Assembly (NCBI RefSeq): GCF_016432865.1
Contig: NC_067403.1
Coordinates: forward strand, 255,440,001-255,504,000
Length of the DNA: 64,000 bases
Direction: 5' to 3'
Source: Antechinus flavipes
Taxonomy: Eukaryota
Shown: positions 12,117 through 56,706 of the stretch, in pieces
How the letters are laid out: each line of letters begins with the position of its first letter
Position numbering within the stretch: the stretch's first letter is position 1
Made by a program: the position numbers and the translations under genes
The notes under the pieces: model-generated
Seen by the model: the letters and a program-made list of their open reading frames with translations, nothing else
Database searches by the model: none
What the model was told of the DNA's origin: nothing

Positions 12117-12467
12117 NNNNNNNNNNNNNNNNNNNNNNNNNNNNNNNNNNNNNNNNNNNNNNNNNNNNNNNNNNNNNNNNNNNNNNNNNNNNNNNNNNNN
12201 NNNNNNNNNNNNNNNNNNNNNNNNNNNNNNNNNNNNNNNNNNNNNNNNNNNNNNNNNNNNNNNNNNNNNNNNNNNNNNNNNNNNNNNNNNNNNNNNNNNN
12301 NNNNNNNNNNNNNNNNNNNNNNNNNNNNNNNNNNNNNNNNNNNNNNNNNNNNNNNNNNNNNNNNNNNNNNNNNNNNNNNNNNNNNNNNNNNNNNNNNNNN
12401 NNNNNNNNNNNNNNNNNNNNNNNNNNNNNNNNNNNNNNNNNNNNNNNNNNNNNNNNNNNNNNNNNNN
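12117..12467. other. Assembly gap (351 N)
   Basis: Run of N characters. Confidence 1.
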
Positions 12468-38100: not shown

Positions 38101-40040
38101 GCCCCGGACGAGGCGCTTCGCTTTGCCTCAGTTTACTCATCTGCAAAATGAGCTGGAGAAGGAAGCGGCCAGCCCCGACCGGGCCAGGGACAAGGGCTCC
38201 CCAACCTGGGGCTCATCGCTCCCACTTAACAAAGGAGGGAACTGAGGCCCAAAGCCCGGGGCTGCTCCCCCCGGACCACTCCCTGCTCTCTGACCACCTC
38301 GGAGGCCTGAGGGACACAGCCCCCAACCAAGGACAACTCTGTGGCCTGAGGGGTTCTGACCCTCCTTCCCTCCCCTGGAGGGCGGGTCCATGTCAATCCC
38401 CTCACCCCACAAAGTGGAGGCGATTTCTGACCTGGAAACCCAGAGGAAGGGACCCCAGAGTGAGGGTCCTGGGGGGCCCCAGCCCTTGTTTTCGGGCTCT
38501 GGGGGAGGGGAAGAGCTGTAGTCCACTGACCTAAGGTCCCAGACTGCCCAATCACAGGGGAGGGGCGGGCATGAGACCAGCCCAGCTGCTGAGGTCACAG
38601 GTCAGATGCCGAAGGCTCCCCTTCGGAAGCAGCAGGCGGCCTGCCCGGCCCCCTCAGTCTGCGGCTCATCTCTCAGGGAGCCCCCATAAATCTGAGGGTC
38701 CTCTTCCTTCAGCCCCAGGGTCTGCTCAGTTTCTCTGACCTCTTTCCGGAGGAAAAGCCTCCCATGATCCCTCAGGGTGCCCCTTCTACCCCCCCTGCCC
38801 CCTTAGCCCAACCTACGTCCCCATACCCTGCCGGGGAGCCCCTCTGACCCAGGGTAGCCCCGAAATCAAAGCTTCCTAGGGCTCGGGGCCCGGGGCTTTG
38901 GCCGGGGGCGGCAGCCTTGGTCGGGGCGGGGAAGAGCGGCAGCTTCGGAGTCCGAAGCCTGTAATTTGTAGTTCCTTCTGGGGTCAGCTGAGCTATGAAT
39001 CACGGTCCAGCACCTAAGCCCCGTCCCTGCCCCACCCCCAACACTCCCCCCCAGCTGAGGGGTCCTGGTCCCCCCGCCCCTCCCTCGGATCCTGCTCCCC
39101 CCGGGGGTTCTTCCCCAGTAAGAGGCCCCTGCCCCTGCCGGAAGTGACAACTGTTGCCAAACAGTCCCAAGGCATGTTGATCAACAAGAGCCTGACGTGA
39201 GCTGTTGTTGACATCAGGGACGCCAGGACGGGGGTGGCCCCTCCTCCGGGCCCTTGGGGGAAAGGGGTTGCCCAGACCCCCCTAAGCCCCGTGGGGGATG
39301 GGGTCTGAAGGCCCCTTCCCAGCTTCCTGCCCTTCCTCCTCCCGGCCTGGGACCCAAGCCCCCAATTCTAATGGAGGGGAAAAGTTGGACGGGGAGGGTC
39401 TGCCTTCTCCAGCCCCAAGACCTTCTCCTTCACCCTTTAATGGGGGGGCAGACTTCCTCCTCTGGGCTGGGGGCTGCCTCCCCCAGGCTGGCCCCCCGGG
39501 ACAAGACCCTTCTCTCCAGAATTCTAATGGGGAGGGGGCGTCTGATTTCAGCGTCTGCCCTCCTCCTTGGCCGAGTGTTTCCCCTTCCTCCTCCAGTCCC
39601 GAGCCCCTTCCCCGTCATTTAACTGGGGGGGAGGGGGGTGTTTCTGCCCCGGGTGAAGGCTGTCCTTCCCCAGCCGGCCCTTTGCCTCTCGAGACTGGCT
39701 GGGGCCCGGGGAGGGTGGGGGAGTCTGGGCCGCGGCTCCGCGGACTCTGTCGGGGCCTCGTTTTGCCCCATCCGTGCAATGGGAGCCCTGCTGGGGCCCG
39801 GCCGCCTGGCACTCCGGCGTCCCGGCTCCCCGCCCCTCGGGTCCCCCGGTCCCGACCCCGGCCGCTCACCCATACGTCCAGGTGGATGTCCCGCAGCCCG
39901 CCGCTGCCCTGGTACAGGTCCAGGCTGAGCTGCTCCAAGCTCAGCCGCTCCTGCAGGAAGTGGCCCAGATAGTGCTGCAGCAGGTAGCGGCAGGCCCGTT
40001 TCTTCATGCAGCTCGACCACGGCCACAGCCAGCGCGACAT
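18474..40040 (-). CDS. ATG2A: Autophagy-related protein 2A (lipid-transfer protein); 41 coding exons, ~1946 aa after correcting two 1-nt deletions
   Basis: Starts MSRWLWPWSSCMKKRACRYLLQHYLGHFLQERLSLEQLSLDLY, contains the LIR SDEFCIL, and ends DHALKWRSEEPQD*. Exons (GT-AG; phases consistent except the two noted): 39870-40040, 37821-37983, 37598-37749 (1 nt short), 37392-37494, 37014-37149, 36799-36897, 36509-36605, 36279-36425, 36030-36194, 35356-35599, 35125-35275, 34933-35025, 34669-34824, 33464-33706 (1 nt short), 33266-33362, 32981-33143, 30395-30537, 30170-30315, 29891-30051, 29233-29383, 28956-29155, 28777-28857, 28596-28702, 28425-28517, 27447-27517, 27073-27149, 26422-26592, 26022-26148, 25696-25925, 25397-25605, 24450-24585, 23823-24020, 23234-23335, 22928-23012, 20655-20802, 20472-20544, 20034-20116, 19689-19810, 19325-19479, 18815-18967, 18474-18710. 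Confidence 0.96.
21455..22470. repeat. 41-bp VNTR, ~23 copies (ACAACTATCACAGCGCTTGTCCTCACGGGTAGGACGTACAT), in ATG2A intron 34
   Basis: The period was measured directly (CACAG at 21801 and 21842). Confidence 0.95.
23064..23205. repeat. (CA)n microsatellite and degenerate extension
   Basis: Directly visible. Confidence 0.9.
31260..32690 (+). mobile_element. Degenerate L2 LINE fragment with an internal minisatellite (31845-32160), in ATG2A intron 16
   Basis: L2-like blocks (CTCCCATTGATTCAATGACCAC, CTATTCAGCCACAAAAGGGATTTTCTTAAA) ending in the L2 tail CATAGTAGGTGCTTAATAAATGCT. Confidence 0.7.
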
Positions 40041-41306: not shown

Positions 41307-41671
41307 GGGTGAAACAACAGTGGGGCTTTGGGGGGAGCCTGGAGACCCATCTGGGAGGAGCCGCAGAGGGCCTTCCCCCCTCCCTGCCCCAGCCTCCGCC
41401 CAGCGCAGGGAGCAGTGTCTGAGGGCCGGAGCCTCCCGCAGGTGCGGCCGGGCCCAGAACGAGGGCGGTGCCGGCGAACACCTGTTCTGGGTCACGGCCT
41501 GTAACTAGGACAGAGTGAGGGAGTGAAGGAAGCAGGAAATGGTGCCGGAGGCCGGGGGCGCCTGCTCTTACTCAGGCTGGTCCCGGCTGGGAAAACTCCG
41601 GCTGGGAACCGCTGGGAGCGGGCAAGGGCCCGGGACGGAGCCGGTCTGAGGTGAGAGGGGAAGGGCCCGGC

Positions 41672-41975
41672 AGCTCCGGAACTCGGGTCTGGCGGCTCCA
41701 GAACTCAGGCCCGGCAGCTCCAGAACTCGGGTCTGGCGGCTCCAGAACTCAGGCCCAGCAGCTCCAGAACTCAGGCCCAGCAGCTCCAGAACTCGGGTCC
41801 AGCGGCTCCAGAACTCAGGCCCGGCAGCTCCAGAACTCGGGTCTGGCGGCTCCAGAACTCAGGCCCGGCAGCTCTGGAACTCGGGCCTGGCAGGTCCAGA
41901 ACTCAGGCCCAGCAGCTCCAGAACTCGGGCCCGGCAGGTCCAGAACTCAGGCCCGGCGGCTTCGGAACTCGGGTC
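41672..41975. repeat. 21-bp VNTR, ~14 copies (CAGCTCCAGAACTCAGGCCCG-type)
   Basis: Directly visible. It lies in the 3' UTR of the SLC22-like gene and overlaps the predicted stop. Confidence 0.9.
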
Positions 41976-44900
41976 TCCTGCTTCTGCCGCGCCGGAGCCT
42001 CTGTCCTCCCCTGCGCTGCGCTGGGGCCATCTCTTCGCAGGGACTAGAGCTTGGTCTGGAGGGGCTGGGCCCCCCGCCGTGGTTTCCTCAGCAGTCTGCT
42101 CCAGCATCTCCGGACCCTGGGGATGGGAGGGAAGTTGCCCCTTTTGGGGGCTCGGCCCCCCTTTGCCCCCAAGGGAGCTCTGGAGGCCTGGCCAGGAGAG
42201 GGTGAGCCCTGGGGGGGGGTGACTATACCCGGGCCAGAGACACCCCTGCGGAGGCCTGGAAGGGCCAAGGGAAGGAGGGCTGGGGGTCACCTACTGGCTC
42301 TGCGCTTGTTCCAAGGTGTCGGGCAAGGGCGCGCCCCTCGTCTCGGGCAGGAAGAGGACCAGGCAGCTGGTGGCCAGGACGCTGGCCCCGAAGAACACGG
42401 GCGGCAGGAGGGGGAGCGTGGGGCCGGCCAGCAGGACCAGGGGGGCCGTCACCCCGCCCAGGTGGCCCACCATGTTAGTGACGCCCATGCCAGTCATCCT
42501 GCGGAGCCGGGGGAAGGGCCGGGATTGAGAGCACAAAGACCCTCTCTCGGGGAGAAAGGGCCTCATCGGGGCCCCAGAGCTCGGAGCCCCAGAGCCCCAC
42601 AGAGCTCACTGCTCATCCAGTCGGTGCTCGGGAAACGTTTGCTCAGCAGCCTTCGAAGGGGCCCGGGCCAGGGGGGAGGGGGACAGGGGGGGCGCGGGGG
42701 ACTCACCGGAGGGAGGTCGGGAAGACTTCAGAGGCCACGAGGACAATGCAGCTGAGGGAGGCTGACATGAGCCCCTTGGACAGCACTGCCAGCCCCATGT
42801 GGAGGCGGCCCAGCTCTGCGGGCACAAGGGGTGGAGACCGCGTCAGCCAGGCCTGGGGGATGGGGAGCCGGGGGGGGATGGGGAGCTAGGGGGGATGGGG
42901 AGCCGGGGGGGGATGGGGAGCTGGGGCAGATGGGGAGCCGGGGGGGGGAAATGGGGAGCTGGGGGGGATGGGAAAGGCGAGCCCCTCGGGCCAAGCAAGG
43001 TCAGAGCCGGGAGGGTGAGAACCTGGACCGTGTGAGCCCGGAGAAGCCCTTGGAGCACTAAGGGACCTCCTGGGAGAGACTGAGAGCCTCAGGTGGCCCA
43101 AGGAGGCTCCCGTCCGGTCTAAATGGGACTAGCGGCCACCGCCTTCCTCCTCCCGGGCCCGGGATCCTCCCCAAAGCTCTTCCCACCAAAGCCGCCCCGA
43201 GTCCGTGTCTCGGCTCCCGCGCCCCTCAGAGGGGAAGGCTGAGTTGAGGGTTGAGGTCGGCCTTCCATCGCCCCCCACCTCTGCAGGGGGTCTGGCCGGG
43301 ACCCACCCGCTGGCACTGGGATGGCCCCCAGGAGGAGCCCCCCTCCGAGCAACGTGCAGGAGGCCAGGGTGAGCCTGCGTCCCAGGCAGTCGGCCAGCTT
43401 GGGCACCAGGAGGCGAAAGGGGAGATCTACGATCCCCAGGACGACCTGAACCAGGTACGGATCTTCGCCCGGGAAACGCTGGATGTCCAGGGCCAGAGAA
43501 AAGAAGGCCAGGCTGGCCGAGAACCTGGGACGGGAAGGCGGGGGTCACCCAAAGACCCCTCCCCACTCCCTCCCAGGGCGCCTCCCCTGGAAAAGGCCGC
43601 CGGTCCGGCGCCGGTCTGGACATGGCCGTCACTGCTCGGACCTCTTCTTCCCCGGCGATGGCGCGAGCCAGACTGGGGGCTCCAGGTCCCCCCGGGTCAG
43701 ACGTGCCCAGGTTGCCCTGCTGACCTTCTGTGTTCTACGTTCCACGGTCCCTCCCCCCTTCATGTTCCATGTTCTAGGTTCCACGGTCCCTTCTCCCTCT
43801 GAATTCTCGGTTCTGAAGCCCCTCCCACGCCCGGCGCGCCACGGTCTCTGTTCCGCGGTCACGGCCGTGTTATGCTCTAAGTTCTCCCCTAGCTCTGCCC
43901 TTGGGAGCCCCGAGGTTCTCTGCGCTTCTCCCATTCTGTGACCCACGAAGAGCAACACGACAAAGCTGCGGCCCTGAGGCCCCTTTAAGGAGCAGCAGCT
44001 GCTCAGTCAGCGGGAGCCCCTTCCAAAGGCTCGGCCGCCCGGACTTGGGTCCAGAGAAGCTGTCCCCGGGCCCGGCAGGAGGGGCTTTTCTCCCCCAGCT
44101 CCAGGCCTCCCCCTTGCCCCAGAGGCCTGGCTGTTGGGGTTCCGGGGACCTGCCAGGAGACCCAGCCCCCCCCTCGCCCTCGGCAGATGAAGCTGAGGCC
44201 CAGAGGGGTGACCCACCACCCGGGTGGTCTTGGGCGGGTCATTGCTCCTCTAGGCCTCAGTTTTCCCCATCTGTAAAACGAGAGGGTTGGGCGCAGTGAC
44301 TGGCTCTAGAACTAAGATGCTGGGAAGGACCTGGCCTCCCCTCCCCCCGCCCTTCCTTCCATCTTTGCCCCCCACGTTCCTGCTTCCCCGGCTCGCTCAC
44401 CAAATGCCCATGATACAAGCCAGCAGGGCCAGCATCTCCCGGGTCCGGAACAGGTCCAGGGTGGCGGCCCCTGGGGCTCCTGCAGCCTCCTCCTGAGAGT
44501 AGTCGGATTCCAGCATCTGTGGGCAAGAGAAAAGCCTCCGGGGGTGGGTGGGGGTGCCTGGAGAGGGTGATGGGCAGCCCCCCAGCAACCAGCCCCCCCC
44601 CGCTCTCCCCCCCTCCCCCCTAGGGAGAGCTACCCCCCCCCCGCTCTCCCCCCCTCCCCCCCAGGGAGAGCTGTTCCCCCCCCCCCCGCTGGCCCCTCCC
44701 CCCCAGGAGAGCTGCCCCCCGCCCCTGCCTTCCCCCCCTCACCTCCAGGGAGAGCTGGGCCCCCGCGGCCGGGACCCCGTTGATCCGCGACACCAGCTTC
44801 AGGGAGCGCAGGGCCTCTGCGAGGCGGCCCCTCACCGCCAGCCACCGGACGGACTCTGGGAGCCACCTGCGGAGCGGGACAGGGTGGGCGGCAGCCGGCC

Positions 44901-46482
44901 AGGCCTCCCCCGCCCCCCCCACGGCGAGGCCCCGGGTGCTCACCAGCCGCAGAGGAAGCAGAGGGCGAAGGGGGCCCCGGCGGCCAGCTGCAGGTGCCTC
45001 CAGCGCCGGAGGCCGAAGGCCAGAAGGGCCAGGTTGAGCTGCCCCAGACTGAGCACGAAGGAGAGGAGGCCGGACACGGCTGCGCGGCGGGAGGGCGGCG
45101 TCCACTCCAGAACTGGGGAGAGAGGCCCGGCTCACGCCCGGCAGGGGCGCTTTCGGGCCTGGTGATGGGCGAGGGCCGCCGGGAAGCCCGAGGTGGCAGC
45201 GGGGCGTGATCGGGCGCAGGGGCGGCGGAGCCGGGAGGGTCCCGGGGCAGCGTGGGGGGCAGTCTGGCCCCAGGGCGGGCGGGGGGTCACCTGCCCCTCA
45301 GGGAGCACCCCCCTCCCCCGGCCCCCTCCCCCGCACTCACCCAGGCCCAGGCCGTTGAGCACCAGGCCGGACATGCCGGAGCCGCAGAAGCAGCGGCACA
45401 CACAGTACACAGAGAAGGAGGGGGCCAGGGCTGCCCCCGTGCTCAGGGAAGCCACCTGGAGGAGGCACCAGAGGAAGACAGTCCGGCGGCCCAGCCTGGG
45501 GGGCGGGGCCGGGGTCAGGGCAGCCTGGGCTGGCCCGGCCCCACAGGCCCCCGAGCGGGGGAGACACCCCCAGGAAAGGGCCTCGGCCGCCCCATCTCGG
45601 GGACCCCCGACCCCCCTCCGGCTCCGGCTGCCCCGACGCTCACCTGTCCGCCAGCCCCCCGAACACGACGGCCCCCAGGAACACCCCCGCCATGTAAACC
45701 GACTGGGCCACCCTGGGGAGGCTTTTCAGGCTGCAGACCAGGTCCCACTGTGGGGGAGAGGGAGCAGAGCGAGGGGGGCTCAGGCGTGAGCCCGTGGAGG
45801 CTTGCCTCAGTTTCCCCCCTGCGTCTCCGGGGCCATTGCGGGGGCGTGGCACTAGTCACCTGCCTGGCAAAGCAGCGGGGGGGGGGGCAGAGTCTGGGGG
45901 AGGGGAGGGAAGAAGAGGAGGACCAGGCGGCCGAACCCTCCCCCTCTGCATCCAGGCGCCAACCTCCCCGGTCTCCCTTCACTTCTCACCTGGCAGTTTG
46001 CCTCCCTCCAAGACACTTGGAAGGAAACGCTCCTCCATCACCCCCCCCTTCCTTGGCCCCTTAGCGCCCCAGACCGGAAGCTTCAGCGGGGCCCCCAGCA
46101 CCGCAGGGGCTGCATAAGTGTCTAGGACGGGGCATTTATTAAGCACTTACTCTGTGCAAACGCCCCTCAGCTCTCGGCTTTTGCACCGTTTCCCCCCAAG
46201 CCTTTGCCCTGCCTCTCCCTTTACCGTCCGAGTAATTTGTTTTCTTCAGGAAATACGGCCCAAGAAGCAGCTTGCACAGGAACCCCCCCCCCCCCAGCTG
46301 CTGGTCCTCACCCCCCCCCTTACCTTCACACACACACACACACTCACACACACTCACACACACTGTGAGACACACACTGACACACATACACACTTACACA
46401 CACAGTGACACACACACACACACACACTCACACACACTCACACACACTGTGAGACACACACTGACACACATACACACTTACA

Positions 46483-46513
<31 letters not shown>

Positions 46514-47554
46514 TCTCCATCAGAGTGCAACGCCAGCCTCTTGACAAGAGGAAGGTTCCATTTTTGTCTTTTTGCATCCTCAGTGTGTACAGCTCAATGG
46601 CTGGTATACAGTAGAAATGTAATAAATGCTCCATCAACTTCTACCTCGTGACCTTGGGCAATCACTTCGCCTCCCTGAGCCTCAGTTTTCTGTAAAACAA
46701 TGGGTTTGTTGGACTCGTCTGCCCCCCGGCCCCCACGTTAGGGCTCTCTCGCAGTCCTTCTCACCCACGCCCTCTCATGACCAGCTTCGCACGGTGCCTG
46801 GCACATAGTAGGCGCTTTGCCCTTCCGGACGATGCTCTCCTCTTTCCCCATCGGTTTTCACACTGAAACCCGGCCCATCCCTCGAGGTTCCCCTCCTCCT
46901 CCCAGGAGGCTGCTGCCCCGGCCCTGCAGCCCAGAAGGGACTTCTCCCTCCTTGAACTCCCACGATACCTTGTTTTTTTACCAAGTTATTTCCCCAGATG
47001 TTTCTCATGCTCTTCCTGGAGAACTTTCCCGTGACCTTTAAAGCCCCCCACAGGGAGACCCGCGTTCCAACCTGCCTCAGATGCTGCCTAGCTGTGTGGT
47101 CTCAGGCCAGTCACTTTCCCCTTTGAGCCCCAGTTTTCTCATCTGGAAAGGGGGGAGATGGTAGCAGCCCCTCCCCTGGTTGGGAGGCTCGGGGTGATCC
47201 GGGTACCTCGGTGACAATGGTGGTCTGAACTGTGGTGAGGTTGTAGACCCAGCCTTCCCGACAAGCCTCCGTCTCATTGGTAGCGTTGCCCCGGGGGCGA
47301 AGGCAGGTCTCCGGCTGCCCCCCGGCCTCCGCCGGCCACGGCTCGCTGGGGCTCCTGCAGTGATGGTCGGGGGTGGAGGCCGTGAAGTTCTGGAGGAACC
47401 CGTGGGTGCCCACGAAGGCAAAAGGCACGAACAAGATGGCCAGGTGGACCATCTGGAAGCGACCCCACCCTCCCACCTGCTCCAGCAGGCTCCCCAGCCC
47501 CTTTGCCTTCCTCCCCGTCCCCCCTTCCGCTCCCGGGGCCCCGTTCCTGCCCAT
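41947..47554 (-). CDS. SLC22-family (organic anion transporter-like, MFS) protein; 10 exons, ~551 aa (516 aa if intron 9 is read through)
   Basis: Family motifs LLEQVGGWGRFQ, QNFTA-TPDHHC, GWVY-TIVTEWDLVC, GGLADRLGRR, EWTP, WLPESVRWL, DLFRT, LGRR, SEVFPTSLR and FLPETRGAPLPDT. Exons, all GT-AG and phase-consistent with no stops: 47207-47554, 45644-45747 (104), 45341-45495 (155), 44944-45112 (169), 44743-44866 (124), 44401-44516 (116), 43307-43524 (218), 42707-42815 (109), 42295-42498 (204), tentative last exon 41947-42055. The exon-size series matches the OAT/URAT1 gene structure as I recall it. The paralogue cannot be named. Confidence 0.9.
42856..42972. repeat. G-rich ~13/26-bp tandem repeat (GGGGATGGGGAGC..)
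   Basis: Directly visible in SLC22 intron 7. Confidence 0.8.
46325..46512. repeat. Compound (CA)n tract with an 84-bp direct duplication
   Basis: CTGTGAGACACACACTGACACACATACACACTTAC occurs at 46363 and again at 46447. Confidence 0.9.
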
Positions 47555-49800: not shown

Positions 49801-50227
49801 GAAGATTAACCGTTTCTCTCCCTGGTCTTTCTCTCCCTGGTCTTCTCCTCCCTCCCCGCTCCGGCCCCCTCCCTCCCTCTCTCCACCGCCTCTGTTTCTG
49901 CTCTAGGATCATTCTACCTCGACTTCCCCTCAATAAGAACTCTGTAACCAGCTTCTCCTGCCCCTCCCCCAAGGGCCTGCCACCTGAGGACCCCCCTCTT
50001 CTAGCTGCCCCCCAGGGACTGACTGGTTGCTTGGTAGGGCCCTGGGGGGGAGGCAGGGGGCGTAGTTCTTGTCTCTGAGCCCCTCGTTACCAGGTCCGTA
50101 CCCTGGCCAGCATGGGTCAGCCAGGGGCTCCCTGTTAGCCAGGACTTTGGCAGAGTAGGCATCTGGTAGTGGGGGGACACCTTCCCCTCCCCCCGTGCCC
50201 CCCGACGCTGCGGCCCCCTTAGTCACC

Positions 50228-53200
50228 ATGGACACCAAGCTGCCCCCAGCGAGCACCCCGACCAGCCCTTCCTCCCCCGGGCTGTCCCCAGTCCCCCCGC
50301 TGGACAAAGTAGACGGCTTCTCTCGGAGGTCCCTCCGGCGGGCCCGGCCCCGGCGCTCCCACAGTTCTTCCCAGTTCCGATACCAGAGCAACCAGCAGGA
50401 GCTCACCCCCCTGCCGCTGCTCAAGGGTGAGTGGGCCCGGGGCTGGGAGGGACCCGCTGCTCTGCCCCCAGGGCGCTGCCCCTGCTCGGGCTGGGCCGAG
50501 TCTGCTGACGCACGTTGGGTTCTGCCTGTCATGGATGGAGCCGGGCCTGCCTCGGGGTCGCCCAGCGGGGCTTCCCTCGGTCGGGGACATCCCGGCCGGG
50601 CCAGGCCGGTTCTGCCGATGCCGGGGGCTCACGGGCCCCGAGAGCTCCTGAGAGTGTGTGCTCAGCCGGGATCCCCCGGGCGCCGCTCCTAGCTCCGGCT
50701 CACCCTCCCGGGGGACGCCGAGACTGTTTACCTGCTCCTGGCCCTGCTGCCGGCTGCCGGCCCGAGTGGGCTGGGGCAGAGGGAGCCGGGAGCAGCGGCT
50801 GCCCCGGGAAGCCCGGGGATCCCGGGCCAGATTTTACTTCTAAAAACTTGCTACCTTCCAGGGAAGGGAAAACGAGAGGCAGGAGAAGGGACGTGGGTGT
50901 CCGGGCAGGGTCCAGGAGGGCAGGGGCAGCAGTGGGAGGCCGGCCTGGGCGGGAGGGAGCGGGGCCCGGGACGCCCCCCTCTGGCCTGGCCGCGCTGCTG
51001 GGGTCCGGCCCCGGGGCTCAGGCCGGCGGCGGTTCCCCCCCCAGATGTGCCGGCCTCGGAGCTCCACGACTTGCTGAGCCGGAAGCTGGCCCAGTGTGGG
51101 GTCCTCTTCGACTTCCTGGATTGTGTGGCCGACCTGAAGGGGAAAGAGGTGAAGCGGGCGGCCCTCAACGAGCTGGTGGAGTGCGTGGGGGGCACCCGGG
51201 GCGTCCTCATCGAGCCGGTGTACCCCGACATCATCCGCATGGTGAGCGGGCTGCGGCGGGGCGGTGGGGGCGTCGAGGCCGGCCCAGGTGCCTCGGGTTT
51301 AAGTGCAAGGACTGGTCCGGGGTCACACGTTCCGGGCCCGGGTCCCTGACGCCCCAACTAGCCAGCTTTGGAAGGGCCCTCGCTGAGCGCCCCCGACCCT
51401 CCCTCTTAGATCTCGGTGAACATCTTCCGGACGCTGCCGCCCAGTGAGAATCCCGAGTTTGACCCTGAGGAGGATGAACCCAACCTGGAACCTTCCTGGC
51501 CACACCTGCAGGTATCCGGGCCCTGGGCACACGGCCCCCTTCTCCCCCCTCGCCAGCTGGCAGTACCCGGGTACCCGGGGCTGTGGGCTCGGAGGTCCGG
51601 ACGCTGCAGCCCGGCAGCAGGCCTGGGGCCCTGGGCTCACGGCCCCCTTCTCCCCCCTCGCCAGCTGGTCTACGAGTTTTTCCTGCGTTTCTTGGAGAGT
51701 CCGGACTTCCAGCCCTCAGTGGCCAAGAGATACGTGGATCAGAAGTTCGTGTTGATGGTGGGTGAGGCTGGAGCCCAAGGGCCTGGCGCTCTGAGGCCGG
51801 CTGGGGGGGGGGCTGGGGAGCAGCCCCTGGGGGTCCGGATGGAGGGACCCCCGGCCAAGGGAGGGAGGGAAGGAGTGGGCCTTGAGGCTGCCTGGGGCCT
51901 CCCCTCCGCCAGCCCTGGCCCTGACCTTGGGCCCCACAGCTCCTGGAGCTGTTCGATAGCGAGGACCCCCGGGAGCGCGAGTACCTCAAAACCATCCTGC
52001 ACCGCGTCTACGGCAAGTTCTTGGGCCTTCGCGCTTACATCCGAAAGCAATGCAACCACATCTTCCTGCGGTGAGCGAGGAAGCCCCTGCACCGGGGAGG
52101 GGGTGCGGGGGGGGGGGGGGCACAAGCACGCAGGGTGGAGGAGCGTGGCTGGGGGGCAGGGAGGGCTCCGCCCTTACCTTCCCCCTAACCTCTCCCCCTC
52201 TCTCCAGGTTCATCTACGAGCTGGAGCACTTCAATGGCGTGGCCGAGCTGCTGGAGATCCTAGGGAGGTAAGTGGGAGCCACAGCCCCAGTCAGACCGAG
52301 GTAGCTGCTCCCAGGGAGCTGTCCAGCGTCTGAGCCACCGGGATTCTCCTCCCTCCTCCTCCTTCCTTCTGCCTCCTCCCTCCTATTCCTCATGCCCTAT
52401 TTCCTTCTCTCTATCCCTCCTCCCCTTCTTCCTCCCTTCTTCCTTCCTTCCCTCCTCCTTTCTTCCTTTTTTTTTCCTAGCCTTCCTCCTTCCCCTCTCC
52501 TCCTCTTTGCCTTTCTCCTTTCCTCCTGCTTTCCTCCCTCTTCACCCCTTCTTCGTTCCTTCCCTTCGTCCCTTCTTCCCTTTTTCCCACTTCCCTTTCT
52601 TCCTCTCCTCCCTTCTCTCCCCTTCTGCTCCCTTTTTCCCTTCTTCTCTTTTCCTTCTCTCTTCCCTCCTTCCTGTTTCCTCCTCTCTCTCCCTCTCCCT
52701 CCTGTTCCCTTCCCTTCCCCCTCATCCTTTTGCCCTCACGCGTCCTCCCTCCTCCACAGCATCATCAATGGCTTTGCTTTGCCCCTGAAGACTGAGCACA
52801 AGCAGTTCTTGGTCCGCGTGCTGATCCCCCTACACTCAGTCAAATCTCTCTCCAACTTCCATGCCCAGGTGAGCCCCTTCCCTCCCCTCCCCCCGGTTCC
52901 CGTCCCCTGGATGGAACCAAAGGCTCGGGCCCGAAAGGGGCTCCAAGGCCCCGCGGCCGAGCCCTTCTCTCCCCGTGACCTTCAGAGGGCAACGGCTGCG
53001 CCCCGAGGCCAACAGGAGGCGGATCTGAACGTCTTAGGGGGGCATCCGGGGGCAGTGGAAAGGGGCCGACCATTGCCCGGCAGGACGTTGGGCCCGTCTG
53101 GGTCTCAGTTTCCTTATCTGGGCGATGGGGGCAGGGGGCTGCTGATTGACCTCCCCCCTCCTGACGGCCCCCCCGCCTCTGCAGCTGGCGTACTGCGTGG

Positions 53201-56200
53201 TGCAGTTCCTGGAAAAGGATGCGACCCTGACCGAGCACGTGAGTGACCAGGGCGCCGCATCCTCCCTGGGGGGCGGGCGGCCTCCGCTCCCTCCTCTGAC
53301 CCCCCTCTGCCCCGCAGGTGATCCGGGGATTGCTCAAATACTGGCCCAAAACCTGCACCCAGAAGGAGGTACCGGGGAAGCTGCTGCAGGGACGGGGGGG
53401 GGGGGGGCATCTCCGGGGGGGGGGGGCATCTCCGGCGAGGGGGGACTGAAGGCCGCCCGTCCGCAGGTGATGTTCCTGGGGGAGATGGAGGAGATTCTGG
53501 ACGTCATCGAGCCCTCCCAGTTTGTCAAGATTCAAGAACCCCTCTTCAAACAGATTGCTCGCTGTGTCTCCAGCCCCCACTTCCAGGTATGGGGGGAGGG
53601 CAGGGCGGTGCCTCAGATCCGGCCCCGGACAGCACCTCGGAGCCCCCTGTCACCTGGGGGGAGACACAGGAAGGACCCGGGGGGTCACCGGGTCCAGCTT
53701 CTTTGTTTACAGATGGGGAAACTGAGGCCCAGAAAGGCGGGGCCCGAGAGGAGGCCCTTAGACCAGGGGGACAAGAGATCCGTGTCCTTAGTCCAGGAAT
53801 AGCCCCTTCCTTGCCCTTCACCACGTGGGTGACGTTGCGCCCCGTCAGTGCCATCTCTGTGCCTCGCTTTCCCCATAAGGGTGGGAGTCGGCCCTGGAAG
53901 TTTCTAACCCGTCACTGTGAGTCGCCGGCAGCCCCGGCCTCTCTGGGCCTGTCTCTAAAACCAGAGAGTTGGGCCGGGTGCGGTCGGAGTCGGCTCCCAC
54001 TCGACAGGGCGCCTGGGGAGCGCGGGGGGCCGGCTTTGGCGCTGCCCTCTGCGGGCCTCAGTTTCCCCCGTGTTCCGGCCCAGATCTAGACCCCTGGGAC
54101 GGACCCCCCGAGGGGGCCGGGGAGGGGCTTCGGCCCAGCCCCCGCTCACCGGGCGCCCCTTCCCCAGGTTGCAGAGCGGGCTCTGTATTTCTGGAACAAT
54201 GAATACATCCTGAGCCTCATTGAGGACAATTGCCACACCGTGCTGCCTGCTGTGTACGGGACCCTCTACCGCGTCTCCAAGGAGCATTGGAACCCGTGAG
54301 TGCCCGCGGGACCGACTGCCCCCTCCCCCCCGCCCAGGCCCAACGTCCTGGGCCAGCCCTGGCTGAGTGCCCGCCGTGTGCCCGGCCCCGGGCCCCGAGA
54401 AAGGCAAAGCAGCTACCGGGAGGAGTGGGGTCGGTGCAGGGGGCGCCCGATGGAAATGCGGGAGCGGCAGGGCCGGAGCCCCGGGGTGCAGGAACTACAG
54501 GTGGGGGCGGCCAGAGCCAGGATCTCACCTTTGAGTCTGGGGGTCATGGGGAGCCCGGGGATTGTTGAAGGGGGAAAGGGATGGTGTGGGGGACGTGATC
54601 AGAGCTGCCCCTTGGCACCGCAATGTGACAGCTGAGTGAAGGGGGGGGCAGGGATGGCCTGTGTCCTAAGGCTCTCCCAGCCCTGACACCCCCTGTTCTA
54701 GGTCCCTCCCAGCCCTGACATTCCATGTTCTAAGGCTCTGACATCCCTGTTCCAAGCTCTCCTAGCTCTTACATTCCCAGTTCTAAGCCTTCTCCCAGCC
54801 CTGACACCCCCTGTTCTAAGTCCCCAGCCCTGACATTCCATGTTCTAGGTCCCTCCCAGCCCTGACACCTCCTATTCTAGGTCCCTCCCAGCCCTGACAC
54901 CCCCTGTTCTAGGTCCCCGGCCTCCGGCCCATCTCAGAACTCTAGAGCTCGGCAGCCAAGGCCGCCCTGAGCCCAGCGCGCTGGCTCCTCACTCCCTCCG
55001 AGGGGGAACGCGGGCCCTGCTTGCGGACCTCCAGGGATGGGGGTCGCCCCTTCCGGATCAGCCGGATTGTCGGGAATCCGTCCCTGACTCCGGCCACAGG
55101 GGGCTCCCTCTCCCCCTCCTCACTGCCCCCGGCCAGCCCTCGGGCCCAAACCCACGGAGCCGGTCCCTTGCCTGGGATTCCCTCGGATGCTCCGGCCCCC
55201 CAGGAGGCCGCCCGCGCCCCGTTTCTTTGTGAGCCACGGATGGGAAGCCCTCCCTCCTGGCTGCCCCCCCCACTGGACCTTCTGCAGCTCTTCACTGCCC
55301 TCCTAGAGCCCAGGGCTTCAGTGGGGACCCCCAGGGCGGGGCCCAGCAGGCCTACGGCCCCTCATCCTCCAAGCTTTCCTCTCTGTGCAACCCAGGGTCC
55401 CGGCAGCTTTCTCCGATGCCCCATCCCACTCATTCACACTCCACTAAGACCGCCGGGTCTTTTTCAGATGGGTGATATTTAGCAATGTCTCCCATGCCTC
55501 ATGAAAATAATTTCTCGAGCCCTGGGCTAGAACTGGCTCCGACATTTAGCACCCGGTGACTTTGTGTAGGTCCCCGAACCTCTCTGGGGCTCATTTTTCT
55601 CCTCTGTCAAATGAGACGTGAGCTCTGAGGTCGCGTAAAGCCCTCCCCTCACCCCCGTGGCTTCTCTGCTCTGGGTTCTGGGTTCGAAAGCTGGGTCCGT
55701 TCCGAGAAATGGAGCTTTGTTGCTGAGGGAGGCCGGGGGGGGGGGGGCACTGCCCTCCTGTTTCCTGCCCAAGTCAGAGCCTGTCTGAGGGCTCGGCTCC
55801 AGGGGCGGGAGTCGGGATTTTCTCCTGGAAAAGACTTGGGGGAGCACTGGGGCGGGAGGACCGGCGAGTCACCGGCAGGAGGGATCAGCGTTGGCCATCG
55901 TGGCCTGAGAGGCAAAAGTGGGAGAGCATGAGGGCAATTAGCGGGGGTGTGGGAGGGGCTCTGTGCCACCGAGGGAGGCCTTTAGGTGTGGGATGGCTGC
56001 CTCTCACTGACGGAGGCCTTCAGGCAAGGACTTGCCCAGGGTCCTGGGTGCTGGGAGGGGGGGGCTGCCCCTGGCCCCGGCTCCCCCTCCGCCTCCCAGG
56101 TCTCACCTCCTGCCCTTCTCCCACCCCCAGGACCATCGTGTCTCTGATCTACAACGTGCTTAAAACCTTCATGGAGATGAACGGGAAGCTGTTCGATGAG

Positions 56201-56706
56201 CTCACGGCTTCTTACAAACTGGAGAAGCAGCAGTGAGTGGGGGGGCAACGGCGCAATGGGCACAGAATGGGACATGGGCATGGGGGAGGGGCCTCAGTGG
56301 GCACAGGGCGGGACGTGGGCATGGGGGGAGGGGCCTCAGTGGGCACAGGGTGGGACGTGGGCATGGGGGGAGGGGCCTCAGTCGGCACAGGGTGGGACGT
56401 GGGCATGGGGGGAGGGGCCTCAGTGGGCACAGGGTGGGATGTGGGCATGGGGGAGGGGCCTCAGTGGGCACAGGTTGGGACATGGGCATGGAGGGTAGGC
56501 CCGGGGGGCACTCGGGCGGGCAAGTGCGCCCCGCTAACTCCTCCTCGCCTCCCCTCGCCCGCTGCAGGGAGCAGCAGAAGGCCCGGGAGCGGCAGGAGCT
56601 GTGGAAGGGCCTGGAGGAGCTCCGGCTGCGGAGGCTGCAGGGGGCGGACGAGCCTCCGCCGCATCGGCCGGGGGCCAGGCCGGCCCCGGGAGGGGAGCAG
56701 AGCTAG
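50228..56706 (+). CDS. PPP2R5B: PP2A regulatory subunit B56-beta; 13 coding exons, 494 aa
   Basis: Starts [24 protein letters not shown] and contains [26 protein letters not shown] and the B56 core. Exons: 50228-50426, 51045-51241, 51410-51511, 51665-51757, 51940-52070, 52208-52267, 52760-52868, 53185-53238, 53318-53368, 53467-53586, 54168-54295, 56131-56232, 56568-56706. Total 1485 nt, frame intact. Confidence 0.97.
52340..52755. repeat. Polypyrimidine (CT-rich) low-complexity tract in a PPP2R5B intron
   Basis: Directly visible. It explains the spurious ORFs 52392-53246 and 52477-52725. Confidence 0.85.
54660..54915. repeat. ~32-bp degenerate minisatellite (CCCAGCCCTGACACCCCCTGTTCTAGGTCCCT)
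   Basis: About 7-8 copies, similar to the reverse complement of the 33-bp unit at 578-1035. Confidence 0.85.
56262..56490. repeat. 42-bp VNTR, ~5.5 copies, in the last PPP2R5B intron
   Basis: Unit GGGGGGAGGGGCCTCAGTGGGCACAGGGTGGGACGTGGGCAT; the spurious ORFs show a 14-aa period. Confidence 0.9.

What the first reader, a model, noticed from the sequence alone, without database searches (positions are those of the whole stretch)
42440..42500. The anion-selecting TM11 arginine is histidine, and the substrate pocket is remodelled
Seen: TM11 reads RMTGMGVTNMVGHLGGVTAPL (His codon CAC at 42462-42464). It aligns without gaps to OAT1 RQTGMGMGSTMARVGSIVSPL, placing H at R466. Established (numbering from memory): this Arg determines anion selectivity in OAT1/OAT3/URAT1, and OCTs have Asp there. 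Other pocket positions also differ: N35>G (THGFLQNF), Y230>L (SFVLSLGQ), Y353/Y354>FF (SLAFFSL), K382>R (DLPFRL), F438>L and F442>V (SASLSCIVL); D378 is retained. Inference: probably not a classical anion exchanger. A titratable His suggests pH-dependent or neutral/zwitterion transport, i.e. a new specificity class.
Basis: partly seen in the sequence, partly recalled or inferred. Interest (0 to 1): 0.8.

Follow-up and report, generated by a model that had tools for sequence, protein, structure and literature searches.

The report
Marsupial OAT transporter lacking its anion-binding arginine
An intact organic-anion-transporter-like gene, which placental mammals appear to lack, has in all 12 marsupials checked replaced the pore arginine that every studied relative needs to bind anions, yet the gene is still under purifying selection, so it probably carries something different or works differently.

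Summary
The His codon CAC lies at 42464-42462 on the minus strand, in exon 9 of an intact 10-exon, 539-aa SLC22 gene (47554-42044). The exon aligns without gaps to human OAT1 456-521, which puts His on R466. The other residue claims also hold: N35G, Y230L, Y353/354FF, K382R, F438L and F442V, with D378 kept.

His is not private to this assembly. It is CAC/His in 9 of 12 marsupials from four orders. Wombat and wallaby have Tyr and bilby has Gln. Echidna, platypus, turtles, crocodilians and all 45 other OAT-clade sequences aligned have Arg. The Arg was therefore lost on the marsupial stem and has not returned in any species checked.

The gene lies between PPP2R5B and ATG2A. It belongs to an unnamed clade sister to SLC22A20/OAT6, and no eutherian member was found. 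Its dN/dS among marsupials is 0.18-0.29.

In human paralogues the same change impairs transport or causes disease (URAT1 R477H, OCTN2 R471H), and in rat OAT1 R466A and R466K do not support function. A departure from the classical OAT mechanism is therefore well founded.

The specific "titratable His" idea is weakened by the Tyr and Gln replacements. Half of the claimed pocket remodelling predates the Arg loss. Substrate and expression remain untested. I class it as a new variant of a known kind, of moderate interest.

The parts
47207..47554 (-). Exon 1: start codon, 17-residue N-terminal extension, TM1 (THGFLQNF, with Gly52 at the OAT1 N35 position) and an extracellular loop 24 residues shorter than in OAT1 that keeps its Cys residues and NxT sites
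   Evidence: Gene model. phmmer alignment to human OAT1 4-123.
45644..45747 (-). Exon 2: end of the loop and TM2 (WDLVC ... GGLADR)
   Evidence: GT-AG junctions. Same 104-nt exon in eight orthologous loci.
45341..45495 (-). Exon 3: MFS motif A (LGRR), TM3-TM4
   Evidence: Weak MFS_1 hit.
44944..45112 (-). Exon 4: TM5 with Leu223 at the OAT1 Y230 position, and TM6
   Evidence: phmmer alignment to OAT1 212-263 without gaps.
44743..44866 (-). Exon 5: LPESVRW motif and start of the cytoplasmic loop
   Evidence: Weak Sugar_tr hit.
44401..44516 (-). Exon 6: rest of the cytoplasmic loop and start of TM7
43307..43524 (-). Exon 7: TM7 (Phe346/Phe347 at Y353/Y354), TM8 (Asp372 at D378, Arg376 at K382) and TM9
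   Evidence: phmmer alignments to URAT1 360-426 and OAT1 347-416.
42707..42815 (-). Exon 8: TM10 (Lys425 at K431, Leu432 at F438, Ser433 at N439, Val436 at F442)
   Evidence: phmmer alignments to OAT1 424-454 and URAT1 429-465 without gaps.
42295..42498 (-). Exon 9: TM11 and TM12, the stretch in the finding
   Evidence: phmmer alignment to OAT1 456-521 and OAT4 462-530. The donor CA|GTAGGT joins exon 10 in frame.
42462..42464 (-). His460 codon CAC at the position of OAT1 R466 / URAT1 R477 / OCTN2 R471
   Evidence: The same CAC codon is in devil, dunnart, monito del monte, possum and opossum, and CGG (Arg) in echidna. TAC in wombat and CAA in bilby.
42044..42116 (-). Exon 10: C-terminal tail ending ...QTKL, plus the stop codon
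   Evidence: Matches the C-termini of the marsupial and monotreme orthologues.

Best explanation
The stretch is TM11 of an intact, selectively maintained SLC22 carrier of the OAT clade. The gene lies between PPP2R5B and ATG2A. It belongs to an unnamed tetrapod paralogue group (marsupials, monotremes, turtles, a caecilian, crocodilians plus snakes) that is sister to SLC22A20/OAT6, and no eutherian member was found.

Shown: on the marsupial stem the family-invariant TM11 arginine became His (CGN to CAC). Since then it has drifted only among residues that carry no fixed positive charge (His, Tyr, Gln) and has not reverted in any of the 12 species checked. Shown: the rest of the transport machinery is kept. 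This includes the fold, MFS motif A, the ESxRW and PET motifs, the four loop cysteines, the D378-K431 pair and a basic residue on TM8 (Arg at K382).

Inferred: the protein still works as an alternating-access carrier, but it has lost the TM11 anion/chloride site (OAT1 R466 with S462/T463, here His, Asn, Met). It should therefore be chloride-independent. It should be unable to hold a substrate's anionic group, or a second carboxylate, the way OAT1, URAT1 and OCTN2 do. With a single basic pocket residue, and Gly/Leu/Val in place of Asn/Tyr/Phe, it should favour mono-anionic or uncharged amphipathic solutes, or use different coupling.

The exact side chain at the site appears not to be critical. 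What is conserved is the absence of the arginine.
For: Gene model and alignments.

Orthologues and site states. His in 9 of 12 marsupials, Tyr in 2, Gln in 1; Arg in both monotremes, 4 turtles and 2 crocodilians.

Of 62 columns that are at least 97% identical in 45 non-marsupial OAT-clade sequences, 6 differ in at least 8 of the 10 marsupials in that alignment. Among the substitutions, only the R466 column loses a charge.

No compensating basic residue was gained in the pocket.

Purifying selection: pairwise dN/dS is 0.18-0.29 among six marsupials, and eight loci share an identical 10-exon GT-AG structure.

Synteny B56-SLC22-ATG2.

Tree: the clade has 100/99 support and is sister to the A20 group at 95/88. 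True OAT1 and A20 orthologues are present separately in marsupials.

Fold: AF2 model of the 95%-identical devil orthologue has pLDDT 85.5 and pTM 0.86. Foldseek top hits are OAT1 and URAT1 at TM 0.77-0.89.

Literature: all OATs carry this Arg; R466A and R466K do not support function; Cl- is held by R466 together with S462/T463 (PMC10643130). URAT1 R477H is a hypouricaemia variant that hampers urate uptake (PMC11528023). OCTN2 R471C/H/P are implicated in carnitine deficiency (PMC12780140).
Against: The TM8 Arg, D378 and K431 are retained, so anion transport through site 1 alone is not excluded. URAT1 tolerates R477K, and an R477S mutant could be solved structurally, so the site is not structurally essential. 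Three changes at the site within marsupials could mean that it no longer contacts substrate at all. The absence of a eutherian orthologue rests on a word-based protein search and on synteny recalled for human, not on a genome search.
Confidence: 0.6

Rival explanations
1. Classical organic-anion transport is retained. The TM8 arginine (K382 position) and the remaining polar pocket residues are enough to bind anions, and position 466 has simply become tolerant in this paralogue.
For: The basic TM8 residue, D378 and K431 are all kept. The site varies His/Tyr/Gln as if weakly constrained. K382R, Y230L and F438L were already present in Arg-bearing monotreme and/or turtle orthologues, so the clade's pocket already differed from OAT1.
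Against: In every SLC22 member tested, removing this Arg abolishes or strongly reduces transport: OAT1 R466A/K, URAT1 R477D/E/H, OCTN2 R471A. Arg is 45/45 in other OAT-clade sequences. Reversion is a single transition (CAC to CGC), yet it is seen in none of the 12 species.
Confidence: 0.22
2. One reading: the His acts as a titratable switch, giving pH-dependent or proton-coupled transport.
For: His is the ancestral and majority marsupial state (9 of 12 species). It sits mid-membrane in the cavity-lining helix, by homology with OAT1 and URAT1 structures.
Against: Wombat and wallaby have Tyr and bilby has Gln, in genes that are otherwise intact (wombat and bilby exon structure verified; wallaby full-length 539-aa isoform). 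Neither residue titrates near physiological pH. No acidic partner was gained nearby.
Confidence: 0.1
3. Transport has been lost. The protein survives in another role (receptor or chaperone-like, as proposed for some atypical SLC22 members), or the gene is slowly decaying.
For: The substitution is a loss-of-function change in human paralogues. The mammalian and marsupial stem branches are long (0.56 and 0.42). No RNA support was obtained.
Against: dN/dS is 0.18-0.29 across marsupial lineages that span the deepest splits in the group. Full-length open reading frames were found in all 12 species, with splice sites verified in the eight loci that have DNA. 56 of 62 family-invariant columns are kept, including the gating and MFS motifs. 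The AF2 fold is confident.
Confidence: 0.07
4. Sequencing, assembly or gene-model artefact.
For: No reads could be laid on the window.
Against: The same CAC codon, in the same exon structure, is present in five independent assemblies of other species. All junctions are GT-AG and in frame.
Confidence: 0.01

Closest known systems
SLC22A6 / OAT1 (rat and human cryo-EM structures, e.g. 8sdu, 9mau, 8bw7)
   Same: Same fold (Foldseek TM 0.77-0.89, about 40% identity). Gap-free alignment of TM5, TM10 and TM11. D378, K431, a basic TM8 residue, the loop cysteines and the MFS motifs are kept.
   Different: Not the orthologue: marsupials have a separate OAT1 (P0204 groups with eutherian OAT1 at 100/100), and the genomic neighbours differ. 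R466 is His, and the chloride-staple partners S462/T463 are Asn/Met. N35, Y230, F438 and F442 are replaced by Gly, Leu, Leu and Val. The extracellular loop is 24 residues shorter.
SLC22A20 / OAT6
   Same: Nearest named group in the tree: the sister clade, at 95/88 support. Some automatic annotations name the marsupial gene 'member 20(-like)'.
   Different: True SLC22A20 orthologues exist separately in marsupials (P0351 groups with human, lemur and guinea pig at 100/100). All A20-group sequences examined keep the TM11 Arg.
SLC22A12 / URAT1 and SLC22A11 / OAT4
   Same: Best PDB sequence hits for exons 7-9. [quoted passage not shown]
   Different: They form a separate clade. URAT1 R477 binds urate directly, and its natural R477H variant hampers urate uptake and is associated with hypouricaemia (PMC11528023). 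Here the equivalent change is fixed.
Monotreme and turtle orthologues of the same gene ('SLC22A6-B-like')
   Same: Same clade, with the same 10-exon structure and PPP2R5B/ATG2A neighbours verified for echidna. They already share K382R, Y230L/V, Y353F and, in monotremes, F438L.
   Different: They keep Arg at the TM11 site, Asn at N35, Tyr (His in platypus) at position 442, and Ala at 465 and 469.
OCT1-3 (SLC22A1-3)
   Same: Another SLC22 lineage in which the TM11 Arg is replaced and charge preference differs.
   Different: OCTs have Asp at the site (PMC9521027) and lack the TM8 Lys. This protein has no acidic residue there, keeps the TM8 base, and is phylogenetically an OAT.

Membership tests
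SLC22 family (MFS fold) | 12-TM MFS fold with a large TM1-TM2 extracellular loop and a TM6-TM7 cytoplasmic loop | tested here: met
   AF2 model of the devil orthologue (95% identical): pLDDT 85.5, pTM 0.86. Foldseek top 46 hits are all SLC22 structures. Orthologues carry PF00083 and PF07690.
SLC22 family (MFS fold) | Sequence motifs: motif A G-x3-D-R-x-G-R-R after TM2, ESxRW after TM6, LGRR after TM8, PET-x-G after TM12, and conserved loop cysteines | tested here: met
   GGLADRLGRR, LPESVRW, CLGRR, LPETRG and the Cys of HHC, ETC, EAC and DLVC are all present in the model. 56 of 62 family-invariant columns are kept in marsupials.
OAT subclade of SLC22 | Phylogenetic placement inside the OAT1/OAT3/OAT6/URAT1/OAT4 clade | tested here: met
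   Careful ML tree: inside the 64-row OAT clade (100/97), away from the A13, OCTN and OCT-like outgroups.
OAT subclade of SLC22 | Conserved TM11 arginine (OAT1 R466, rOAT3 R454, URAT1 R477) | tested here: not met
   His460 in the window. His, Tyr or Gln in all 12 marsupials.
OAT subclade of SLC22 | Conserved TM8 basic residue (OAT1 K382, URAT1 K393) | tested here: met
   Arg376 aligns with K382. The charge is kept but the residue differs.
OAT1/OAT3-type chloride-regulated exchanger | Chloride site formed by R466 with S462 and T463 (PMC10643130) | tested here: not met
   The three positions are His, Asn and Met.
OAT1/OAT3-type chloride-regulated exchanger | Organic anion / dicarboxylate exchange activity | not testable with these tools
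   Requires uptake assays.
SLC22A6 (OAT1) orthologue | Groups with OAT1 in the tree and lies beside SLC22A8 | tested here: not met
   A separate marsupial OAT1 (P0204) groups with eutherian OAT1. This gene lies between PPP2R5B and ATG2A.
SLC22A20 (OAT6) orthologue | Groups with eutherian SLC22A20 | tested here: not met
   Dromiciops P0351 groups with human, lemur and guinea pig A20 (100/100). The window gene is in the sister clade.
OCT (SLC22A1-3) | Asp at the TM11 site and no TM8 Lys | tested here: not met
   His at the site, Arg on TM8.

The most novel reading that the evidence does not exclude
The marsupial protein is a natural, charge-neutralised OAT. A carrier of OAT ancestry, it has been selected for tens of millions of years without the TM11 arginine, and it moves uncharged, zwitterionic or cationic solutes, or mono-anions by a chloride-independent single-site mechanism. 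If so, it is a living intermediate between OAT-type and OCT-type selectivity. The Arg-bearing monotreme orthologue would serve as a ready-made control.
Probability: 0.22. Interest if true: 0.7.

Novelty: new variant of a known kind. Interest (0 to 1): 0.5.

Why it matters
[quoted passage not shown] Changing it to His in URAT1 or OCTN2 is linked to human disease. Here a whole mammalian infraclass carries that "pathogenic" state in an otherwise well-conserved OAT paralogue, and sister lineages (monotremes, turtles) still have Arg. This gives a clean evolutionary pair for asking what the arginine contributes to charge selectivity, chloride regulation and gating. It also flags an uncharacterised SLC22 gene, seemingly lost in placentals, that may matter for marsupial renal, hepatic or olfactory handling of metabolites and toxins. 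It has no direct human orthologue, which limits its biomedical reach.

Tried and rejected
1. Pfam on single exons gave only sub-threshold MFS_1 and Sugar_tr hits because the pieces are too short. Family membership was taken from the orthologues and the fold instead.

2. Read evidence failed. The look-up of sequencing runs gave RNA runs holding only 5-6% of the words, plus probable DNA holders. I therefore have no expression data and no read-level confirmation. The only later uses of that part of the window were local scripts in the closed sandbox, including a blastn of the devil locus against the whole window file. The TRF call stopped at 46650.

3. The look-up of encoding contigs found nothing for the X2 isoforms of wombat, wallaby, bilby and koala. 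The X1 isoforms from the listing of cluster members gave wombat and bilby DNA. Wallaby and koala codons were not seen at DNA level.

4. The koala X2 model looked as if it had Arg there. This is an aberrant isoform; koala X1 has His.

5. I looked for a compensating new Arg or Lys in the marsupial pocket and found none. There is only a Lys five residues after the TM8 Arg, and basic residues in the TM9-TM10 loop, where OAT1 is also basic.

6. I considered that the gene is OAT1 or OAT6, as the automatic names suggest. The tree and synteny reject both.

7. Literature searches for this paralogue (SLC22 plus marsupial; SLC22 plus ATG2A plus PPP2R5B; SLC22A20 plus reptiles) found no description of it.

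8. Mouse Oat1 numbering is offset by 6 at this site. Human numbering was taken from the PDB alignments instead.
Full report
**What is there.**
- The finding lies on the minus strand. Reading 42520 to 42280 on that strand shows an acceptor (…ccgcag|G) followed by ATG ACT GGC ATG GGC GTC ACT AAC ATG GTG GGC CAC CTG GGC GGG. The His codon CAC is at 42464-42462.
- A three-frame scan of 47700-42200 picked up nine further coding pieces. With GT-AG junctions these join into one in-frame 10-exon gene of 539 codons. The exons are 47554-47207, 45747-45644, 45495-45341, 45112-44944, 44866-44743, 44516-44401, 43524-43307, 42815-42707, 42498-42295 and 42116-42044.
- The Arg that precedes MTGMG is a split codon across the exon 8/9 junction.

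**Checking the alignment claims.**
- I ran each exon with phmmer against all PDB chain sequences. This gives human OAT1 numbering from deposited sequences rather than from memory.
- Exon 9 aligns residues 2-67 to OAT1 456-521 with no gap, so His falls on R466. Its best hit is OAT4, where His falls on the Arg of VGRLG.
- Exon 1 puts Gly on N35 and shows an extracellular loop 24 residues shorter than in OAT1.
- Exon 4 puts Leu on Y230.
- Exon 7 puts Phe-Phe on Y353/Y354, Asp on D378 and Arg on K382, with a one-residue insertion in the TM7-TM8 loop.
- Exon 8 puts Leu on F438 and Val on F442, and keeps K431.

**Is the His private to this assembly? No.**
- A full-library HMMER search with exon 9 found a 539-aa protein 74% identical over the exon. 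A word search with that protein returned automatically named orthologues ('SLC22A6-like', 'A20-like', 'OAT3-like') from 11 marsupial species, both monotremes, turtles and crocodilians.
- The window's protein is 94.8% identical to the Tasmanian devil's. The window therefore comes from another dasyurid.
- States at the site:

| State | Species |
|---|---|
| His | window species, devil, dunnart, brushtail possum, sugar glider, koala (isoform X1), monito del monte, Gracilinanus, Monodelphis |
| Tyr | wombat, tammar wallaby |
| Gln | bilby |
| Arg | echidna, platypus, four turtles, two crocodilians, and every OAT1, OAT3, URAT1 and A20-like sequence aligned |

- I rebuilt exact CDSs from eight loci. 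All have the same 10 exons with GT-AG junctions. The codon is CAC in all six His species that have DNA, TAC in wombat, CAA in bilby and CGG in echidna.
- The simplest history is Arg to His once on the marsupial stem. Three single-base changes away from His followed: wombat after its split from koala, wallaby, and bilby. There was no reversion, although CAC to CGC is a single transition.

**Is the gene functional?**
- Pairwise Nei-Gojobori dN/dS among six marsupials is 0.18-0.29, with dS up to 0.50. Against echidna it is 0.28-0.39.
- Of 62 alignment columns that are at least 97% identical in 45 non-marsupial OAT-clade sequences, 56 are kept in marsupials. Six differ in at least 8 of the 10 marsupials in that alignment: a deleted loop Asn, L to F, A to S, R to K, G to S/A, and R466 to H/Q/Y. 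The last is the only substitution that removes a charge.
- MFS motif A, ESxRW, LGRR, PETxG and the loop cysteines are all present.
- An AlphaFold2 model of the devil orthologue, built with a 60-sequence alignment, has mean pLDDT 85.5 and pTM 0.86. Its best Foldseek matches are rat and human OAT1 and human URAT1, at TM 0.77-0.89.
- This is not a decaying gene.

**What gene is it?**
- In the devil the neighbours are a B56 (PPP2R5B) gene upstream on the other strand and an ATG2 gene downstream. The echidna has the same arrangement.
- The window is collinear with the devil locus over 25 kb. This puts PPP2R5B at about 50.1-56.7 kb (+) and ATG2A exon 1 near 40.0 kb (−). It agrees with an earlier first-reader note on this window.
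- A careful ML tree of 72 sequences places marsupials plus monotremes (100/100) with turtles, a caecilian, and crocodilians plus snakes in a clade with 100/99 support. That clade is sister (95/88) to the SLC22A20/OAT6 group.
- Marsupials have separate true orthologues of OAT1 and of SLC22A20. The automatic names are therefore misleading.
- No eutherian sequence falls in the clade. The best eutherian hits to the query are OAT1 at 39-40% identity, against 60% for echidna.
- I found no description of this paralogue in the paper library.

**What the pocket comparison says.** Splitting the changes by lineage is informative.
- K382R, Y230L/V and Y353F are shared with monotreme and turtle orthologues that keep Arg at 466. 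F438L is shared with monotremes.
- Phe-Phe at 353/354 is also the URAT1 state.
- The marsupial-specific changes are N35 to Gly/Ser/Pro, Tyr to Val/Ile at 442, and a tight TM11 cluster: Q455 to Met/Leu, A465G, R466H and A469G.
- No new basic residue appears in the pocket.
- Within marsupials the site has three changes on the species tree. It ranks among the 14.5% most variable columns, inside an otherwise invariant N-M-V-G-x-L-G-G motif.
- What is conserved is 'not Arg', rather than 'His'.

**Link to known mechanism.**
- Parker et al. state that all OATs carry this Arg and that neither R466A nor R466K supports function in OAT1. They also show that chloride binds 3.5 Å from R466, with S462 and T463 completing the network (PMC10643130). 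Here those three positions are His, Asn and Met.
- In URAT1, R477 binds urate. R477D, R477E and R477H hamper uptake, and R477H is associated with hypouricaemia (PMC11528023).
- In OCTN2, R471 salt-bridges the carnitine carboxylate, and R471C/H/P are implicated in systemic primary carnitine deficiency (PMC12780140).
- OCTs carry Asp at this position (PMC9521027).
- The marsupial state is therefore one that disables or impairs the classical mechanism in three different paralogues.

**Conclusion.**
- The inference that the protein departs from classical OAT behaviour is reasonable, because the anion/chloride site on TM11 is gone while the rest of the carrier is maintained by selection.
- The specific proposal of a titratable His switch is weakened by the Tyr and Gln replacements.
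- The idea of a concerted pocket remodelling is only half right, since half of the changes predate the Arg loss.
- What the protein carries, and where it is expressed, remain unknown.
- Sporadic His at this site also occurs in a few other unnamed or fragmentary SLC22 predictions, for example an Arapaima fragment. The substitution is therefore rare but not unique.

**Limits.**
- They were only present in local sandbox scripts that read the whole window file (for example).
- I had no access to model coordinates. 'His lines the cavity' therefore rests on the gap-free alignment to solved homologues, not on a residue-level superposition.

Noticed in passing
window ~39870-40040 (-): First coding exon of ATG2A (MSRWLWPW...LRDIHLDVW), about 2 kb downstream of the SLC22 gene's stop codon on the same strand. 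The devil and echidna loci show the same order.
   Followed up: partly
window ~50140-56700 (+): PPP2R5B (B56), placed by collinearity with the devil locus. It is head-to-head with the SLC22 gene, about 2.6 kb from its start codon. The human ATG2A and PPP2R5B genes are, from memory, directly head-to-head, which would fit loss of the SLC22 gene in eutherians.
   Followed up: partly
window 41664-41970: A 22-bp minisatellite of 14 copies, 82% matches (consensus GGCCCGGCAGCTCCAGAACTCA), just 3' of the gene's last exon, in the interval before ATG2A.
   Followed up: no
window 46327-46513: A CA-rich microsatellite in intron 1 that contains an exact 84-bp duplication (2.2 copies, 100% matches).
   Followed up: no
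window 42855-42972 and 44593-44764: G/C-rich 35-bp and 41/84-bp tandem repeats inside introns 7 and 5. The whole gene sits in 65-73% GC DNA.
   Followed up: no
window 12117-12467: A run of 351 N (assembly gap or masked). Left untouched.
   Followed up: no
L006 (echidna) 10001-43950: The echidna orthologue has the same 10 exons but spans 34 kb, against 5.5 kb in dasyurids. The introns are much larger.
   Followed up: no
P0239, P0276-P0286 (proteins): Marsupials carry several additional 'SLC22A20-like' paralogues (58-74% identical to each other). These group with a carnivore and platypus 'A20-like' set, distinct from true SLC22A20, so this is a second OAT6-related expansion not present in humans.
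   Followed up: partly
P0207 (Gopherus evgoodei UniRef isoform): One tortoise isoform shows Trp at the TM11 Arg position, whereas other Gopherus entries have Arg. It may be an annotation variant.
   Followed up: no
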